This document shows positions 29,647-48,351 of a stretch of DNA of 64,000 nt, one piece after another. Both the position numbers and the translations under genes were made by a program. The notes beneath the pieces were generated by a model that ran no database searches, had not been told where the DNA came from, and saw nothing but the letters and a program-made list of their open reading frames with translations. Location: the IMG/VR virus record IMGVR_UViG_3300017917_002434, positions 124,001-188,000 of that record. One strand, given 5' to 3'. Positions within the stretch are counted from its first letter, which is position 1. The number at the start of each line of letters is the position of its first letter.

Positions 29647-30657
29647 ATGAATCTATTCAAAAAAGCAGCGTGTTTTACCGATATACATTTTGGTCTAAAG
29701 TCGGGCAGTAGAACCCATAATACCGATTGCGAGGATTTCGTTAAATGGTTTTGTGAGACTGCTCGAAACGAAGGTTGCGAAACTGCTATATTTCTAGGCG
29801 ACTGGCACCACAATCGTGCTACCACTGATGTTAGCACTATGAATTATACTGTTTCAAATTTAGAACGACTCAGCAAGAATTTTGAACGTGTATTTTTTAT
29901 ACTAGGTAATCATGATCTATTCTATAAAGATAAGAGAGAAATTAATTCTATAGAATTTATGAGATTGTTTCCTAACGTGGTGCCCATCCGTGATCCGTTT
30001 ACAGATGGCGATGTTACTATTCTGCCTTGGTTAGTCGGGGACGAATGGAAAGATGTTCCTAAAATTAAAAGTCGTTATGTGTTCGGTCATCTTGAATTAC
30101 CGAACTTTTACATGAATGCTATGGTACAGATGCCCGATCACGGCCAGTTACAAAGCACTCATTTTGTAAATCAAGAATATGTATTCAGCGGTCACTTTCA
30201 TAAACGACAGAATCATAGAAATATTACCTACATCGGTAATGCGTTTCCCCACAACTACGCCGATGCCGGAGACGATGATCGCGGAATGATGATCTTAGAG
30301 TGGGGCAAAGCTCCTGAATATAAAACTTGGCCGGGACAGCCTTTGTACAGAGTTTATAAACTTAGTCAGATTATCGACAATCCAGATACCCTGCTAAAAG
30401 AAAAAATGCACTGTAGGGTCACTATCGATCTGCCTATTACTTTTGAAGAAGCAAACTTTATCAAAGAACAGTTTATTCCTCAGTATAATCTCAGAGAGCT
30501 TATGCTGATCCCTGAAAAAGTAGAAGTAGAAAGCAATTCGGTTCCCATAGATATCAATTTTGAAAGTGTTGATACTATTGTTATGAACCAGATTGATGCT
30601 ATTGAAAGCGATTCCTACGACAAACGATTATTGCTGGACATCTATAGAGACTTATGA
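29647..30657 (+). CDS. gp47: Recombination endonuclease subunit (Mre11/SbcD-like)
   Basis: Metallophosphoesterase motifs TDIHFG, LGDWHH, GNHD, GHLE and GHFH. ATGA overlap with the ATPase gene. Confidence 0.92.
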   Translation: MNLFKKAACFTDIHFGLKSGSRTHNTDCEDFVKWFCETARNEGCETAIFLGDWHHNRATTDVSTMNYTVSNLERLSKNFERVFFILGNHDLFYKDKREINSIEFMRLFPNVVPIRDPFTDGDVTILPWLVGDEWKDVPKIKSRYVFGHLELPNFYMNAMVQMPDHGQLQSTHFVNQEYVFSGHFHKRQNHRNITYIGNAFPHNYADAGDDDRGMMILEWGKAPEYKTWPGQPLYRVYKLSQIIDNPDTLLKEKMHCRVTIDLPITFEEANFIKEQFIPQYNLRELMLIPEKVEVESNSVPIDINFESVDTIVMNQIDAIESDSYDKRLLLDIYRDL

Positions 30658-32432
30658 TCAAAATAAAAAATCTCACTGTAAAGAATTTTATGAGCGTGGG
30701 CAATCAAACCCAGGCGATAGACTTTGACCGTGGACAGTTAACCTTAGTACTTGGTGAAAATCTAGATCTAGGAGGTGATGACTCTGGTGCTCGCAATGGT
30801 ACAGGCAAAACTACAATCATTAACGGATTGAGCTACGCTATCTATGGTCAGGCACTGACTAACATTAAGCGTGATAATCTTATAAACAAGATTAATGGCA
30901 AAGGCATGTTAGTTACTGTTACTTTTGATAAAGACGGCACCGAGTACCACATTGAGCGTGGTCGTAAGCCTAATTTGCTGAAGTTTAGTGTCAACGGTCA
31001 GGAACAAGAACTTGACGATCTGGATGAAAGCCAGGGCGATTCAAGAGAAACACAAAAAGCCATCGAAGATATGTTTGGCCTAAGTCACGACATGTTTAAA
31101 CATATCGTAGCATTAAACACTTACACTGAGCCGTTTTTATCGATGAAGTCGGGTGATCAGAGATCTATCATCGAGCAGTTGCTTGGTATTACATTACTAT
31201 CTGAAAAAGCAGAAAATCTCAAAGAACAGATTAAGATAACCAAAGATTCGATTGCTACCGAAAACACTAGGATAGAAACGATCAAAGTTTCTAACGAAAA
31301 AATACAGCAAAGCATCGAAAGTCTAGAACGTAAATTAAAATTATGGGAAGATCAAAAAGAAAAAGCCTTAGAGAATTTAAGGAAAAGCATTGATGTTCTC
31401 AGTACCATCGATATCGATCAAGAAATAATCAACCAACGTGCCCTTGTCGAGTGGAATAAAAATAAGAAAGAACATGATAATCTAACTGCGATGATCGCTA
31501 AACAAATTACTGCGTTAGAAAAAGAACAAAAGACTCTAGACAAGCTAGAAAAAGAACTAATTTTATTAGCCGACCACAAATGCCATAGCTGCGGTCAGGA
31601 TCTACACGACGAGAAACATGAATCTATGGTCTCTGCTAAGTCTAAGCAGGTCGAAGACAGTGCGTCTGCTGTAGCTGAGCACCAGAAAGAGCTGGCTACT
31701 TTGAAAGAGGCATTAGCGTTACTGGGAGAATTAAATGCCTGTCCCCAGGTTACCTACGATAGTTTAGAAGAAGCACTGAATCATAAAAACACTCTTTCAG
31801 GTTTAGAAAAAGATATTACTATCAAAGAAGCAGAGACTAATCCTTATGCTGAACAAATTGAAGAACTAAAAAATACTGCCGTACAGGAAATCGACTGGGA
31901 GGCAGTCAATGAATTAACAAAACTTAAGGATCATCAAGAATTCCTTTACAAATTGTTAACAAATAAAGACAGTTTTGTACGCAAACGTATTATAGATCAG
32001 AACCTAGCGTTCTTAAATCAGCGGCTGACTTACTATCTCGACAAGATCGGTTTACCGCACATCGTAGAATTTCAAAATGATCTCACTGTGATCATTACAC
32101 AGCTCGGACAAGACCTAGATTTTGACAACTTATCAAGAGGTGAACGTAATAGACTTATACTTTCACTGTCATGGGCATTTCGAGATGTATGGGAAAATCT
32201 ATATCAACCTATTAATCTGCTGTTTATCGACGAGTTAGTAGATTCGGGCATGGATGCTAGTGGTGTTGAAAGTTCAATTGCTGTGTTAAAACGTATGACC
32301 AGAGAACGCAACAAAAATGTATTCTTGATTTCTCATAGAGATGATCTAACAAGTCGTGTAAATCATGTGTTAAAAGTTATCAAAGAGAATGGATTTACCA
32401 GCTACAGCAACGATGTGGAGATCGTAGCTTGA
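30654..32432 (+). CDS. gp46: Recombination ATPase subunit (Rad50/SbcC-like)
   Basis: Walker A GARNGTGKTT, coiled coil with CHSC zinc hook, signature LSRGE, Walker B LLFIDE, H-loop ISHR. Confidence 0.93.
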   Translation: MIKIKNLTVKNFMSVGNQTQAIDFDRGQLTLVLGENLDLGGDDSGARNGTGKTTIINGLSYAIYGQALTNIKRDNLINKINGKGMLVTVTFDKDGTEYHIERGRKPNLLKFSVNGQEQELDDLDESQGDSRETQKAIEDMFGLSHDMFKHIVALNTYTEPFLSMKSGDQRSIIEQLLGITLLSEKAENLKEQIKITKDSIATENTRIETIKVSNEKIQQSIESLERKLKLWEDQKEKALENLRKSIDVLSTIDIDQEIINQRALVEWNKNKKEHDNLTAMIAKQITALEKEQKTLDKLEKELILLADHKCHSCGQDLHDEKHESMVSAKSKQVEDSASAVAEHQKELATLKEALALLGELNACPQVTYDSLEEALNHKNTLSGLEKDITIKEAETNPYAEQIEELKNTAVQEIDWEAVNELTKLKDHQEFLYKLLTNKDSFVRKRIIDQNLAFLNQRLTYYLDKIGLPHIVEFQNDLTVIITQLGQDLDFDNLSRGERNRLILSLSWAFRDVWENLYQPINLLFIDELVDSGMDASGVESSIAVLKRMTRERNKNVFLISHRDDLTSRVNHVLKVIKENGFTSYSNDVEIVA

Positions 32433-32659
32433 CTACAGAAGCACACGATCGAATGATCAAAGCATTCCAAGAATATTTTAAATGGCAGGACCGCTTTGAA
32501 TACAAAGGATCCGACGAGGCAGGAATTAAGGCACGCTATTGGCTATCAGAAATACGCAACGAGGCAAGTTTAAGGCGAGTAGAAATACAAGAAAAAAGGC
32601 AACAACGGAAGCAAGCCAGAAAAGGCATGTTAGGCAGACCACCTAAAATAACTAAGTGA
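32429..32659 (+). CDS. Small basic protein, possibly histone H1-like (Hc1-type) DNA-binding
   Basis: 76 aa with a TTG start overlapping the gp46 stop. GSDEAGIKARYWLSEIRNEASLRRVEIQEKR and a K/R-rich tail resemble GxKAAxxRARKxL-type small phage proteins. Confidence 0.5.
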   Translation: MTTEAHDRMIKAFQEYFKWQDRFEYKGSDEAGIKARYWLSEIRNEASLRRVEIQEKRQQRKQARKGMLGRPPKITK

Positions 32660-33094
32660 GTGCTGTGGACATATCAAAATCAAATCATAGAAGAAATACC
32701 AGAAGGCTATATTGGCTTTGTTTATCTCATCACCAATCTTAAAACCGGACAGAAGTACATAGGCAAGAAACTAGCACAATTCAAACGTACTAAACCACCA
32801 CTCAAAGGCAAGAAACTTAAAAGAAGATCTGTAGTAGAAAGCGATTGGCGTGACTACTGGGGATCATCTGATAGGCTCAACGCAGACGTCCAAGCATTAG
32901 GTCCGGAAAACTTCACCAGAGAAATACTTTATCTTTGTAAATCCAAGGCAGAAATGTCATATCTAGAGGCTAGAGAGCAGTTTGAACGCAGAGTTTTAGA
33001 AACAGATGACTATTATAATGGTATTATAAACGTCAGAGTAGGCGGATCAAACATACTTAGACAGCGTCTAGAAGAACATAAAAAGGCAAAATAA
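32660..33094 (+). CDS. Minimal GIY-YIG nuclease-like protein
   Basis: GFVYLITNLKTGQKYIGKK fits GIY-x(10-11)-YIG, with conserved downstream YWGSS, REIL and YLEAREQF. GTG start immediately after the upstream TGA. Confidence 0.75.
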   Translation: MLWTYQNQIIEEIPEGYIGFVYLITNLKTGQKYIGKKLAQFKRTKPPLKGKKLKRRSVVESDWRDYWGSSDRLNADVQALGPENFTREILYLCKSKAEMSYLEAREQFERRVLETDDYYNGIINVRVGGSNILRQRLEEHKKAK

Positions 33095-33538
33095 TCGCCA
33101 AAAAAGCCCGCACCGGCGACTGTTATGGTGCCCAAAATCCGCGGTGATGTCACGCGGTAAGGATCCTAAATTGGCGAAGGATAATTACAGTACTATCCTT
33201 AACAGGACGATGATCGGATATGCCTTTAACCGGTTTACTGTACGAAAAATACATTTTTATAGGCTAAATGAGGGTTAATAACCCACGGTTAAAATAAGCG
33301 ATAGCAGGTTTATTTTAATCCGCCGTCAGGATAAGACGGAGCTCGAGGTACCGGCTGACCGCCTCTGTAATGCTCTACTGCTGTGTGACATGTTCGACTC
33401 GGATAATGTTCAAACTTTTGCCCGACCTGGGCAAAGTGTGACTGAACGATCTGGATAATAGTTAAAACTGCTTCGCAGTTAACTTTAAAAAAATGTGTCT
33501 GAGCGGTAGCGATAGACACGAGTGAGCTTTGCTCACTC
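33095..33538 (+). ncRNA. Candidate large structured non-coding element (RNA or ssDNA), family not recognised
   Basis: 444 nt with no convincing ORF and at least 10 stems, including long-range closing helices, G-U-containing stems and a possible pseudoknot. Starts at the base after the GIY-YIG stop. Confidence 0.6.
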
Positions 33539-33545
33539 CTAAATA

Positions 33546-33553
33546 TATAAATA
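33546..33553 (+). promoter_or_regulatory. T4 consensus late promoter TATAAATA
   Basis: Exact consensus 30 nt upstream of the ATG at 33583. A second TAAATA lies at 33540-33545. Confidence 0.75.
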
Positions 33554-33582
33554 ACTAGTATAAGTTCTTAGGAAACTTCTAA

Positions 33583-34725
33583 ATGAAAATCACTGATATA
33601 TTATCTCAAAAACAGCAGGTCGATGAAGCACCTGTTGGTATGTTGAAAAGAGCAGGTCTAGGTATTGCTTCTAAATTGGGCAGTACAAAAGCTAGTGGTG
33701 CTCTTGATATGGCCAAATATGCTAATGGTCTTAGAAAACAATTTGACTTTTATCTAGGACAAACAGATCAAAAGCCTAATTCTGATGCGTTAATAGCATT
33801 CTTAAAGACCAATGGGTTTCCTACAGCTGGTGCTGAAGCTGCGATCAAACAAGCAGGAGTTGAGGCGGGCATGGCAGGCACAGGCGAAATTGCTAAGTCG
33901 CTTGGAGCGGACAGAGTCGAACCAAATATGGATGAGCCTGGCAGCGACACCAATGCCGCTACCGGCAATCCAGAAACTCCTGCTGCTCCTGAAGCTGGTG
34001 CCGATCAGGCTGCTGATGAAAAACCAGCTGCTGGCGGTGCTTCACAGACACAACCTAATTTCAAACAAGGTAATTATCAAGAACCTACATACAGTATGTC
34101 AACAGGGTTTGACAAAGATACGATGAAGAATACTGATGAGCCATTAGCTCCTGGTGCTGTACAACAGAAACAGAAAAAGAAAAAAGAGAGTATTGGTGAG
34201 TTATCTCGTATTGCTGAATTAGCGGGTGTAAAATACACCCCTGTTCAAGAAGTAATGATCGACGAAGTAGAACTTAAGAACGCAACTGTAGATAAAATCA
34301 TCAAAGCCGCAGTTACAGATATTCTCAAATCAAACATGGGACAAAAACTTGATGCTGTCATCGGCGGTCAAGGTGCTTCAGCACAGTCAATCAGCCAAGC
34401 AGGTGGAGATGCTGGAGATGATCAAGGCGGTGGCGGAATTGGTTCTGCTTTTATGGGCGGCATTAAACGCGGTCTAGCAGGCGGTGATGCTGGTGCCGAA
34501 GGTGGAAAAGTCAAAGGTAATCTTAATTACGGTAAGTTATCTGAATTATTACCTGGTGTGGACCCTAACCAATTAAGAAAATCAATTACTAACTATATGA
34601 GTGGTAATTCTCTGACTAGAGAGCAGATGAGTGTGATGGCTACTGCCTTTGGTGAAATAGTTAAGATGGATCCAGCACAGACTACCAAAGCACTTCAGTT
34701 GTTGAAAGCTGTTCGTGCTGGTTAG
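33583..34725 (+). CDS. Late hypothetical protein, candidate internal head protein (380 aa, A/G/P-rich linkers)
   Basis: Has a late promoter, an N-terminus MKITDILSQKQQVDEAP, and an internal ELSRIAELAGV resembling the scaffold C-terminus IRKLAGL. Confidence 0.55.
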   Translation: MKITDILSQKQQVDEAPVGMLKRAGLGIASKLGSTKASGALDMAKYANGLRKQFDFYLGQTDQKPNSDALIAFLKTNGFPTAGAEAAIKQAGVEAGMAGTGEIAKSLGADRVEPNMDEPGSDTNAATGNPETPAAPEAGADQAADEKPAAGGASQTQPNFKQGNYQEPTYSMSTGFDKDTMKNTDEPLAPGAVQQKQKKKKESIGELSRIAELAGVKYTPVQEVMIDEVELKNATVDKIIKAAVTDILKSNMGQKLDAVIGGQGASAQSISQAGGDAGDDQGGGGIGSAFMGGIKRGLAGGDAGAEGGKVKGNLNYGKLSELLPGVDPNQLRKSITNYMSGNSLTREQMSVMATAFGEIVKMDPAQTTKALQLLKAVRAG

Positions 34726-47866: not shown

Positions 47867-47920
47867 TCTAGAGCGTACTCACAGAGTAACTTATGCGGTA
47901 ACCCACCGCGTAGACCTAGA
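47867..47920 (+). promoter_or_regulatory. Structured 5' leader (three-way junction candidate)
   Basis: P1 TCTAG/CTAGA encloses TACTC-aca-GAGTA and TATGCGGT-aaccc-ACCGCGTA. Confidence 0.5.
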
Positions 47921-47943
47921 ACGTCAAATTAAGGAGAAAACAA

Positions 47944-48351
47944 ATGGGACGTCCATTAAGAAAAGATGTACTTGGTACTGACGCTATCGGTACTCCAGCG
48001 ACAAGCAGCACAGGTGTTAGAGTTGAAGCCTACGCAGGAGGAACAGCATACACTGATGCTACTTACAATGCTTCAACAAATTACGCATACATTTACAAAC
48101 AACGCGGTGCTAAAACTTTTGTTCTAAAAAATCAAGCTGGAACAATTCTAGGACCATGCGTACTTCAATCTGCCATTCCAGACGGAAACGGAGAAATGAG
48201 ATTGAACGGTTATGTTGGCGGAAACGCTTCTGCTCCAACACCCATTGCTAAAATCACAAAGCGTGTAGCTACTGATTTTAATAACAATCGTTATACTTGG
48301 GTTCTAGTCAACGACTCTACCAGCGATTACATTCAACTAACCGCTATCTAA
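47944..48351 (+). CDS. Virion structural protein (135 aa; possible capsid decoration)
   Basis: Late promoter, strong AAGGAG RBS, MGRPL start and beta-rich composition, just downstream of the capsid gene. Confidence 0.55.
   Translation: MGRPLRKDVLGTDAIGTPATSSTGVRVEAYAGGTAYTDATYNASTNYAYIYKQRGAKTFVLKNQAGTILGPCVLQSAIPDGNGEMRLNGYVGGNASAPTPIAKITKRVATDFNNNRYTWVLVNDSTSDYIQLTAI

What the first reader, a model, noticed from the sequence alone, without database searches (positions are those of the whole stretch)
32660..33538. Minimal GIY-YIG protein immediately followed by a large structured element: candidate nuclease-RNA system
Seen: the 144-aa protein is essentially the catalytic GIY-YIG domain, with no obvious DNA-recognition tail. 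The first helix of the structured element (TCGCCAA) starts at the base right after its TAA, with no terminator or promoter between. Established: compact nucleases with an adjacent structured RNA include IscB/HEARO and TnpB (omega RNAs) and intron-encoded GIY-YIG enzymes such as I-TevI. Inference: the RNA may be a scaffold, guide or substrate of this protein, an undescribed RNP pairing. Small GIY-YIG-like genes are common near gp46 in T4-like phages, so the linkage could be incidental.
Basis: partly seen in the sequence, partly recalled or inferred. Interest (0 to 1): 0.65.

Follow-up and report, generated by a model that had tools for sequence, protein, structure and literature searches.

The report
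Large phage RNA beside swappable nuclease gene
The structure after this small GIY-YIG nuclease gene is real: it is the known Polynucleobacter-1 RNA motif, here shown to be the front part of a roughly 450-base, multi-pseudoknot RNA of T4-like phages, but the evidence says the RNA is its own gene and not a partner of the nuclease.

Summary
ORF 32660-33094 is a 144-aa GIY-YIG domain-only protein (Pfam SegE_GIY-YIG, E 4e-36). A conserved, covarying RNA starts at the base after its TAA and runs to 33538.

The RNA is not new as a kind. Positions 33105-33242 match Rfam RF01718 (Polynucleobacter-1, 64 bits against a cut-off of 37). Its link to this gene family (GOS11034/PSSM2_218) was already noted in 2010.

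What I add:
- The motif is only the 5' domain of a roughly 450-nt RNA with at least three pseudoknots, a hairpin that is a terminator in most relatives, then a T4-type late promoter.
- Sister phages carry other 5' domains on the same 3' module.

- In 86 RNA loci found by an RNA-only pattern, 83% have the GIY gene directly upstream. In 5 a PD-(D/E)XK nuclease sits upstream instead, and 4 have unrelated neighbours.
- Polynucleobacter chromosomes carry free-standing copies; the one examined has its own promoter-like site and terminator.
- 80 of 80 cyanophage homologues of the protein have no RNA.

Best reading: an autonomous structured RNA gene, co-transcribed at the 3' end of the gp47-gp46-nuclease operon. 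Its function is unknown.

The parts
29647..32432 (+). gp47-like (29647-30657) and gp46-like (30654-32432) recombination nuclease genes; start of the operon
   Evidence: Overlapping ORFs. gp46-like protein matches AAA_23 and SMC_N. gp46 detected upstream in the related loci that reach far enough.
32429..32659 (+). 76-aa ORF of unknown function; its start overlaps the gp46 stop and its stop abuts the GIY start
   Evidence: No Pfam or PHROG family. Conserved in most relatives.
32660..33094 (+). 144-aa GIY-YIG domain-only nuclease (PSSM2_218 / phrog_447 family)
   Evidence: PF19835 E 3.8e-36. phrog_447 E 3e-39. 42% identical to PSSM2_218, E 4e-25. Invariant G19 F20 Y22 Y33 G35 R87 E88 E103 N120. 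Model pLDDT 88.9; best PDB fold match is the I-TevI catalytic domain.
33095..33101 (+). 5' strand of pseudoknot PK1; pairs with 33171-33177
   Evidence: Perfect 7-bp complement in the window. Covaries across relatives (visible in alignment A1). In some relatives (e.g. L015, L063) this strand appears to lie inside the last codons of the upstream ORF, from a noisy complement search.
33105..33242 (+). Polynucleobacter-1 domain (Rfam RF01718). Helices 33110-14/33127-31, 33139-43/33152-56, 33163-67/33178-82, 33186-91/33237-42, 33196-99/33204-07, 33212-17/33230-35
   Evidence: 64.3 bits against a gathering score of 37, E 9e-13. Same hit 10-15 nt after the stop in 14 of 20 relatives. Covariation.
33262..33392 (+). 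Central pseudoknotted domain. Hairpins 33272-74/33282-84 and 33287-99/33308-20. PK2: loop 33301-07 with 33378-84. PK3: 33325-29 with 33355-59. Helices 33338-42/33372-76 and 33345-48/33362-65. Invariant GGUACCGG...ACCGCC.
   Evidence: MI/APC analysis of 88 non-redundant RNAs. 33306/33379: GC 60, AU 26. 33327/33357: UA 53, CG 35. 33339/33375: GC 40, CG 25, UA 11. 33346/33364: AU 72, UA 16. All 94-100% canonical. Not covered by any Rfam model.
33396..33459 (+). Twin-motif module: GACUCGGAUAAU (33396-33407), hairpin 33417-23/33429-35, invariant GUGUGACUGAAC (33436-47), GAUCUGGAUAAU (33448-59)
   Evidence: The two motifs vary between phages but always to the same letters in both copies. nhmmer detects the module in four of six class B loci, plus L017 and L036.
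33466..33480 (+). Hairpin with near-invariant GCUUCGC apex
   Evidence: Stem covaries at about 33467-69/33477-79. Nearly invariant CUUC.
33495..33519 (+). Hairpin with conserved loop GAGCG-NNN-GCGA
   Evidence: Stem covaries (33500/33514: UA 56, CG 27). nhmmer profile d3 (33483-33545, covering this hairpin and the final hairpin) also hits class B, L206 and bacterial copies.
33520..33538 (+). Final hairpin; followed by a U run in most relatives, so a likely intrinsic terminator (weak in this window)
   Evidence: Six of its eight pairs covary at 99-100% canonical (33521-26/33532-37). U runs after it in relatives. The matching hairpin in the bacterial copy scores as a terminator.
33546..33553 (+). 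TATAAATA, T4-type late-promoter motif ahead of the next gene (ATG 33583)
   Evidence: Read in the sequence. AUAAAUA is conserved at this place across relatives. Its meaning as a late promoter rests on established T4 knowledge.

Best explanation
The element is a single-copy gene for a large (about 450 nt, 33095-33538) highly structured non-coding RNA. It belongs to an extended Polynucleobacter-1 superfamily carried by T4-like freshwater and marine phages and by islands in Polynucleobacter chromosomes. In this phage it has no room for a promoter of its own. It is made as the 3' end of the gp47-gp46-orf76-GIY-YIG transcript, its first helix touches the stop codon, and the transcript ends at the final hairpin. 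A late promoter then starts the next gene. The RNA folds into a Polynucleobacter-1 5' domain, a central domain locked by pseudoknots, and a conserved 3' module. It most likely acts in trans as a stable RNA that binds a partner through its invariant loops and its two identical 12-nt motifs. The GIY-YIG protein is an ordinary domain-only phage nuclease. It is the RNA's usual neighbour by descent and shared transcription, not its obligate partner. Shown: the structure, the conservation, the anatomy, the neighbours and their exceptions. Inferred: co-transcription, the 3' end, and action in trans. Unknown: the biochemical function.
For: - RNA identity and structure: RF01718 hit. RNAalifold on 85 RNAs gives 47 pairs, 32 with compensatory double changes. 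MI analysis recovers stacked Watson-Crick covariation for all hairpins and three pseudoknots. Many G-U alternates (e.g. 33296/33311: AU 36, GU 26) show that the + strand RNA is the folded molecule.
- Autonomy, bacteria: 7-8 of 61 Polynucleobacter species genomes hold RF01718. No GIY or PDDEXK gene lies within about 1.5 kb in the four chromosomal loci, and a divergent DUF6641 gene sits upstream. The one copy scanned (L219) has a sigma70-like promoter and a terminator-like hairpin.
- Autonomy, phages: in relatives whose gp46 identity lies inside or near the range seen in GIY-bearing phages (54-69% against 59-93%), a PDDEXK_15 nuclease occupies the GIY slot in front of the same RNA.
- Independence of modules: a GIY protein 93% identical to this one (L024) is followed by an extra ORF and a class B RNA, while 50-60% identical GIY proteins are followed by class A RNA.
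- Operon anatomy: overlapping or abutting start and stop codons from gp47 to GIY. No promoter or terminator before the RNA.
- RNA libraries: metatranscriptome contigs of relatives lie on the GIY ORF and on parts of the RNA, and run from the ORF end into a relative's RNA. None lies on the next gene.
Against: The GIY gene stays directly upstream in 83% of independently sampled RNA loci, even where 0.2-5 kb of other genes separate it from gp46. The usual replacement is again a small nuclease. This is more persistent than simple synteny need be, and a functional tie is not excluded. Transcript ends, stability and any partner are not shown: the RNA-library evidence is contigs only and cannot exclude DNA carry-over. 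The window's own final hairpin lacks a U run.
Confidence: 0.55

Rival explanations
1. Nuclease-RNA particle. The RNA binds the GIY-YIG protein as scaffold, guide, regulator or substrate mimic, which would supply the missing nucleic-acid recognition.
For: The protein has no recognition domain. The RNA starts at its stop codon. GIY is adjacent in 71 of 86 RNA loci, at 50-92% protein identity. In 5 further loci the upstream gene is another small nuclease. Two identical 12-nt motifs could fit a dimeric binder.
Against: The same RNA class follows two unrelated nuclease folds, without a distinct RNA variant for either. Bacterial copies have no nuclease gene within about 1.5 kb. 0 of 80 cyanophage-branch homologues, plus P-SSM2, Melnitz, L208 and L212, have no RNA. 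RNA 5' domains swap independently of protein divergence. No terminal variable guide-like segment was seen, and the twin motif has no further copy or complement in the 269.7-kb genome. Domain-only GIY-YIG enzymes that work without RNA are known (T4 endonuclease II, from my own knowledge).
Confidence: 0.12
2. Cis-acting 3'-UTR device. The structure controls stability, termination or translation of the upstream, potentially toxic, nuclease mRNA. Pseudoknot PK1 would be melted and re-formed by the terminating ribosome.
For: PK1 abuts the stop codon, and in some relatives appears to lie inside the last codons. In phages the RNA directly follows a + strand ORF in 75 of 86 loci, and that ORF is a nuclease in all 75.
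Against: The bacterial copies follow no ORF, and the one examined has its own promoter-like site. About 450 nt with three pseudoknots and invariant loops is far more than known 3' stabilisers need. The RNA also follows non-nuclease ORFs.
Confidence: 0.15
3. Homing target. The GIY-YIG and PDDEXK genes are free-standing homing-type nucleases that settled beside a highly conserved RNA gene, as T4 segB does among tRNA genes. The RNA gene would be their cleavage target, and repair would explain the mosaic 5' domains.
For: Two nuclease families alternate in one slot next to a very conserved sequence. The RNA 5' domain nearest the nuclease gene is the mosaic part. PHROG relatives of the protein are annotated as homing endonucleases.
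Against: The protein lacks the DNA-binding half of Seg and I-TevI enzymes. It is present in about 90% of RNA loci and diverges over a range like that of gp46, which suggests vertical inheritance. Extra ORFs found between GIY and RNA have no Pfam match at all, so no nuclease domain is recognised. The family is near-universal in cyanophage records without any RNA.
Confidence: 0.1
4. DNA-level element (origin, packaging or recombination site), not an RNA.
For: Two direct repeats lie 52 bp apart and evolve in concert. The region lies between an early or middle operon and a late gene.
Against: There is dense compensatory covariation with G-U alternates on one strand only. An Rfam covariance model hits on the + strand. 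Contigs of the region are found in RNA libraries.
Confidence: 0.03

Closest known systems
Polynucleobacter-1 RNA motif (Rfam RF01718; Weinberg et al. 2010, PMC2864571)
   Same: 33105-33242 matches the model end to end above the gathering score. It lies downstream of the GOS11034/PSSM2_218-like gene, as reported. The habitat is fresh water and the bacterial copies are in Polynucleobacter.
   Different: The Rfam model is 141 positions and typed as an sRNA. Here it is the 5' third of a roughly 450-nt RNA (about 580 nt in the bacterium). That larger RNA has a leader pseudoknot, a central pseudoknotted domain, a twin-motif module and a final terminator-type hairpin. The 2010 alignment file marks a 'tail' with a pseudoknot but does not describe it. 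In 2010 the motif was not found in any purified phage; it now sits in hundreds of T4-like viral contigs. The upstream gene was not then recognised as GIY-YIG.
Domain-only and Seg-type GIY-YIG nucleases of T4-like phages (T4 endonuclease II / DenA, SegA-G, I-TevI)
   Same: GIY...YIG motif, and conserved Arg, Glu and Asn. Best fold match is the I-TevI catalytic domain. The size is like T4 EndoII (136 aa, my knowledge). In Melnitz the homologue sits just after nrdB, which matches the T4 denA position (my knowledge).
   Different: There is no DNA-binding tail as in Seg and I-TevI. No sequence-level match to any solved structure. Activity and substrate are untested. GenBank records widely misname it 'NAD synthetase'.
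IscB/HEARO and TnpB omega-RNA systems
   Same: A compact nuclease gene with a large structured RNA abutting or overlapping the ORF end.
   Different: The nuclease fold is different (GIY-YIG, not RuvC/HNH). There are no recognisable transposon ends and no terminal guide segment. RNA and protein occur without each other. No Rfam HEARO hit.
Large ornate phage-associated RNAs (GOLLD, ROOL)
   Same: Several hundred nucleotides, many pseudoknots, carried by phages and prophage-like islands, function unknown.
   Different: No similarity to their Rfam models. Not next to tRNA genes. Smaller. Whether it multimerises is unknown.

Membership tests
Rfam RF01718 Polynucleobacter-1 RNA | Covariance-model score at or above the curated gathering score (37 bits) over the full model | tested here: met
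   64.3 bits, model positions 1-141 of 141, E 9e-13
Rfam RF01718 Polynucleobacter-1 RNA | Helices of the model kept by compensatory changes in relatives | tested here: met
   E.g. 33189-91/33236-38 and 33215-17/33229-31 covary. 14 of 20 relatives score 58-119 bits.
Rfam RF01718 Polynucleobacter-1 RNA | Position downstream of a GOS11034 / PSSM2_218-like gene (reported for most members) | tested here: met
   The upstream protein is 42% identical to PSSM2_218, E 4e-25
GIY-YIG nuclease superfamily (Pfam PF19835 SegE_GIY-YIG) | Profile match above the curated cut-off, and the GIY...YIG motif | tested here: met
   124.5 bits against 25. G19-F20-V21-Y22 and Y33-I34-G35 invariant or near invariant in 36 homologues.
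GIY-YIG nuclease superfamily (Pfam PF19835 SegE_GIY-YIG) | Catalytic Arg, Glu and Asn, and the GIY-YIG alpha/beta fold | tested here: inconclusive
   R87, E88, E103 and N120 are invariant, but I did not map them onto I-TevI R27/E75/N90. The I-TevI catalytic domain is the top fold hit, but weakly (E 0.2-0.9, TM 0.51-0.58 by target).
Seg / I-TevI type homing endonucleases | C-terminal DNA-binding module joined to the GIY-YIG domain | tested here: not met
   The profile covers residues 3-123 of 144. Only a 21-residue tail remains, modelled as one helix of low confidence.
RNA-guided nuclease systems (IscB/TnpB omega RNA type) | Obligate co-occurrence of nuclease gene and RNA | tested here: not met
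   RNA without GIY: 9 of 86 phage loci and the four Polynucleobacter chromosomal loci examined. GIY without RNA: 80 of 80 cyanophage-branch loci.
RNA-guided nuclease systems (IscB/TnpB omega RNA type) | A variable guide segment at one end of a conserved scaffold | tested here: inconclusive
   Variable stretches are internal spacers or insert hairpins. The only co-varying unpaired motif is duplicated and has no match elsewhere in the genome. Host targets could not be searched.
Group I intron carrying a GIY-YIG gene | Group I core (Rfam Intron_gpI) and a split host gene | tested here: not met
   No Rfam hit at E up to 1. The flanking genes are complete and differ between relatives.
tRNA / tmRNA | Detected by ARAGORN or by the Rfam tmRNA models | tested here: not met
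   0 genes in the window. No Rfam tmRNA hit.

The most novel reading that the evidence does not exclude
The extended Polynucleobacter-1 RNA is a new class of large, modular, multi-pseudoknot RNA of phages and mobile islands whose job is tied to small structure-specific DNA nucleases. It would, for example, bind and restrain or direct whichever dimeric nuclease (GIY-YIG or PD-(D/E)XK) is encoded just upstream, through its two identical 12-nt motifs. That would be a nuclease-RNA partnership without precedent for either fold.
Probability: 0.12. Interest if true: 0.85.

Novelty: new variant of a known kind. Interest (0 to 1): 0.5.

Why it matters
Rfam has listed Polynucleobacter-1 as a 141-nt orphan sRNA since 2010. 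Showing that it is the head of a 450-580-nt, heavily pseudoknotted RNA changes what has to be explained. This RNA is carried by hundreds of T4-like phage contigs and by its likely host genus, has interchangeable 5' domains, and shows a curious pair of concertedly evolving motifs. That puts it beside GOLLD, ROOL and HEARO as a large RNA of unknown function. The result also gives a cultured organism to start from (Polynucleobacter asymbioticus-type strains with the chromosomal copy). It corrects a widespread misannotation of the neighbouring protein ('NAD synthetase' in place of GIY-YIG nuclease). And it shows that the attractive RNA-guided-nuclease reading should not be assumed.

Tried and rejected
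- Group I intron, tmRNA, tRNA, RNase P or another Rfam family for 33243-33540: nothing at E up to 1. Class B and the marine variant also have no Rfam family.
- Guide-like targets: the twin motif and the other invariant motifs occur once in the 269.7-kb genome.
- Second copies or paralogues: none for the RNA, GIY or PDDEXK in the genome.
- A cultured phage carrying the RNA: blastn of class A and class B RNAs against 50,697 isolate genomes found nothing. A covariance-model search of those genomes was not run.
- The GIY-RNA junction as a hot spot for homing-endonuclease insertion: the extra ORFs found there (257-296 aa, and 92 aa in L024) have no Pfam match.
- Sequence search of solved structures with the protein: no hit.
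- A naive search for the PK1 5' strand by perfect complement is too noisy with 5-mers. I used it only for L015 and L063.
- RNAalifold on the whole 819-column alignment misses several helices because of MAFFT shifts. Mutual information served better.
- No covariance model was built and no R-scape-type significance test was run.
- Complex prediction was not used: it handles proteins only and no protein-protein claim is made.

Full report
**What is there**

The window is part of a 269,730-base IMG/VR virus record. It has T4-like genes, and the nearest isolate is Methylophilales phage Melnitz. Four ORFs run head to tail on the + strand with overlapping or abutting start and stop codons:
- gp47-like, 29647-30657
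- gp46-like, 30654-32432
- a 76-aa ORF, 32429-32659
- the 144-aa ORF, 32660-33094

The 144-aa protein matches Pfam SegE_GIY-YIG over the whole profile (E 3.8e-36) and PHROG 447. In 36 homologues the GFVY...YIG motif and R87, E88, E103 and N120 are invariant. A confident model (pLDDT 88.9) has the I-TevI catalytic domain as its best, though weak, fold match. There is no DNA-binding tail. From 33095 to 33582 there is no conserved ORF. The next gene starts at 33583, preceded by TATAAATA at 33546-33553.

**The RNA is real and partly known**

Rfam RF01718 (Polynucleobacter-1) hits 33105-33242 on the + strand with 64.3 bits against a gathering score of 37. It is single copy in the genome. The paper that described the motif says most examples lie downstream of gene family GOS11034, possibly related to PSSM2_218 of cyanophage P-SSM2, and that none was seen in a purified phage (PMC2864571). 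PSSM2_218 is 42% identical to the protein here (E 4e-25).

**The RNA is much larger than the Rfam model**

- Eighty IMG/VR loci that encode a protein at least 79% identical are syntenic wherever the locus reaches far enough. Wherever enough DNA follows, the whole stretch down to the late-promoter motif is conserved.
- A 17-base pattern from the central domain, chosen without reference to the protein, pulled 120 further loci. Profile searches confirmed the RNA in 90 of them.
- On 88 non-redundant RNAs, mutual information recovers stacked Watson-Crick covariation for every hairpin and for three pseudoknots:
- PK1, 33095-33101 with 33171-33177.
  - PK2, loop 33301-33307 with 33378-33384.
  - PK3, 33325-33329 with 33355-33359, interleaved with 33345-48/33362-65.
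- RNAalifold on 85 RNAs gives 47 pairs, 32 with double compensatory changes. Frequent G-U alternates fix the + strand as the folded one.
- The 3' module holds two 12-nt motifs flanking a hairpin, a hairpin with a near-invariant GCUUCGC apex, a hairpin with a GAGCG...GCGA loop, and a final hairpin. In most relatives the final hairpin is followed by a U run.

**Variants**

- Six close relatives, plus L024 (protein 93% identical), carry a different roughly 350-nt 5' part (class B). Most of them share the twin-motif module and all share the GAGCG-loop hairpin.
- L036 and L017 have other 5' versions.
- A Red Sea contig (L206, protein 66% identical) has class B. A Mediterranean contig (L205, 74%) has a third version.
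- None of these variants has an Rfam family.

**Is the nuclease its partner?**

For:
- Of 86 informative RNA loci sampled by the RNA pattern, 71 have a GIY homologue (50-92% identical) directly upstream. Six more have it within 1.6 kb behind an extra ORF. This holds although the distance to gp46 varies from 0.2 to 5 kb.

Against:
- In five loci a PDDEXK_15 protein (PF24608; PHROG 244, annotated as a Holliday-junction resolvase) takes the slot upstream of the RNA, once followed by RNase H. The RNA is not of a distinct type in these loci. Their gp46 is 54-69% identical to the window's, inside or just below the 59-93% range of GIY-bearing relatives.
- Four loci have unrelated neighbours.
- Seven to eight of 61 Polynucleobacter species genomes, several apparently single-contig assemblies, hold RF01718. 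No GIY or PDDEXK gene lies within about 1.5 kb in the four chromosomal loci. The RNA lies beside a divergent DUF6641 gene, and once near a phage integrase.
- In the one bacterial copy scanned (L219) it is a free-standing gene of about 580 nt with a sigma70-like promoter and a terminator-like hairpin.
- The protein family is widespread without the RNA: 785 isolate phage records encode it and none has a blastn-detectable RNA.
- In 80 cyanophage-branch loci no RNA module is found, and the next ORF starts at a median of -4 nt.
- Melnitz (64% identical), L208 (60%) and L212 (42%) also lack the RNA.
- The RNA 5' domains change independently of protein divergence.

**Expression**

Sixteen DNA metagenome runs from fresh water, ponds and aquaculture hold the stretch. 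Four metatranscriptome runs from three studies hold small parts. Laid on the window, their contigs (from relatives) cover the GIY ORF and parts of the RNA. Examples are a 189-nt contig over 33360-33543, and contigs that run from the ORF end into a relative's RNA 5' end. None covers the next gene. This fits co-transcription with the nuclease gene and a separate late transcript downstream. But contigs cannot show ends, strand or level, and DNA carry-over is not excluded.

**Conclusion**

The best reading is an autonomous, large structured RNA gene, an extended Polynucleobacter-1 RNA, placed at the 3' end of the recombination-nuclease operon. The nuclease is its usual neighbour, not its partner (confidence about 0.55). 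A cis role on the nuclease mRNA (0.15), a true nuclease-RNA particle (0.12) and a homing-target relation (0.10) remain possible.

The concerted, identical variation of the two 12-nt motifs is unexplained. It is the best lead to a partner.

Two Polynucleobacter MAG contigs carry the same gene-RNA pair, which points to Polynucleobacter as a host.

Noticed in passing
window 47875-47946 (+): A second Rfam motif, RF02980 freshwater-2 RNA (60 bits against a gathering score of 49.9), lies in the same window.
   Followed up: no
window 33396-33407 and 33448-33459: Two 12-nt motifs 52 nt apart vary between phages but always to identical letters in both copies (e.g. GG 75 / CC 11 / AA 1 at 33402/33454). 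This is not base-pair covariation. It suggests a two-fold symmetric loop or a dimeric partner.
   Followed up: partly
L071, L072, L076, L077, L079, L081, L024; L206/L207 (Red Sea); L205: Sister phages carry a different, Rfam-unknown 5' RNA domain (starting GGUUGGCGGGCCAGUUUG) after the same GIY gene, joined to the same GAGCG-loop hairpin and mostly the same twin-motif module. Marine versions exist.
   Followed up: partly
L129:3963-4481, L198:8819-9382, L120, L157, L108: In some relatives a PDDEXK_15 nuclease (PF24608, PHROG 244 'RusA-like Holliday junction resolvase') takes the GIY-YIG gene's place upstream of the RNA. This looks like non-orthologous replacement of one small nuclease by another.
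   Followed up: partly
L219:1372-1990 (G038 chromosome), L216, L217, L220: Polynucleobacter chromosomes (7-8 of 61 species) hold a free-standing copy of the RNA (about 580 nt in L219, which has its own promoter-like site and terminator-like hairpin). It lies beside a divergent DUF6641 / phrog_31551 gene, and in L220 near a phage-type integrase, so probably on mobile islands.
   Followed up: partly
GenBank phage records under hits H9-H44; P-SSM2 PSSM2_218: The GIY-YIG domain-only family (phrog_447) is widely annotated 'NAD synthetase' in phage genomes. That looks like a propagated misnomer.
   Followed up: partly
window 33583-34725 (+): The next gene encodes a 380-aa Ala/Gly/Gln-rich protein with no Pfam or PHROG family. 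It diverges very fast between relatives (only N-terminal similarity) and is preceded by a conserved late-promoter motif.
   Followed up: no
L204 and L209 (MAG contigs labelled Polynucleobacter): Phage-like contigs with the gp46-GIY-RNA arrangement are binned into Polynucleobacter MAGs. This hints at the host, or at mis-binning of phage DNA.
   Followed up: no
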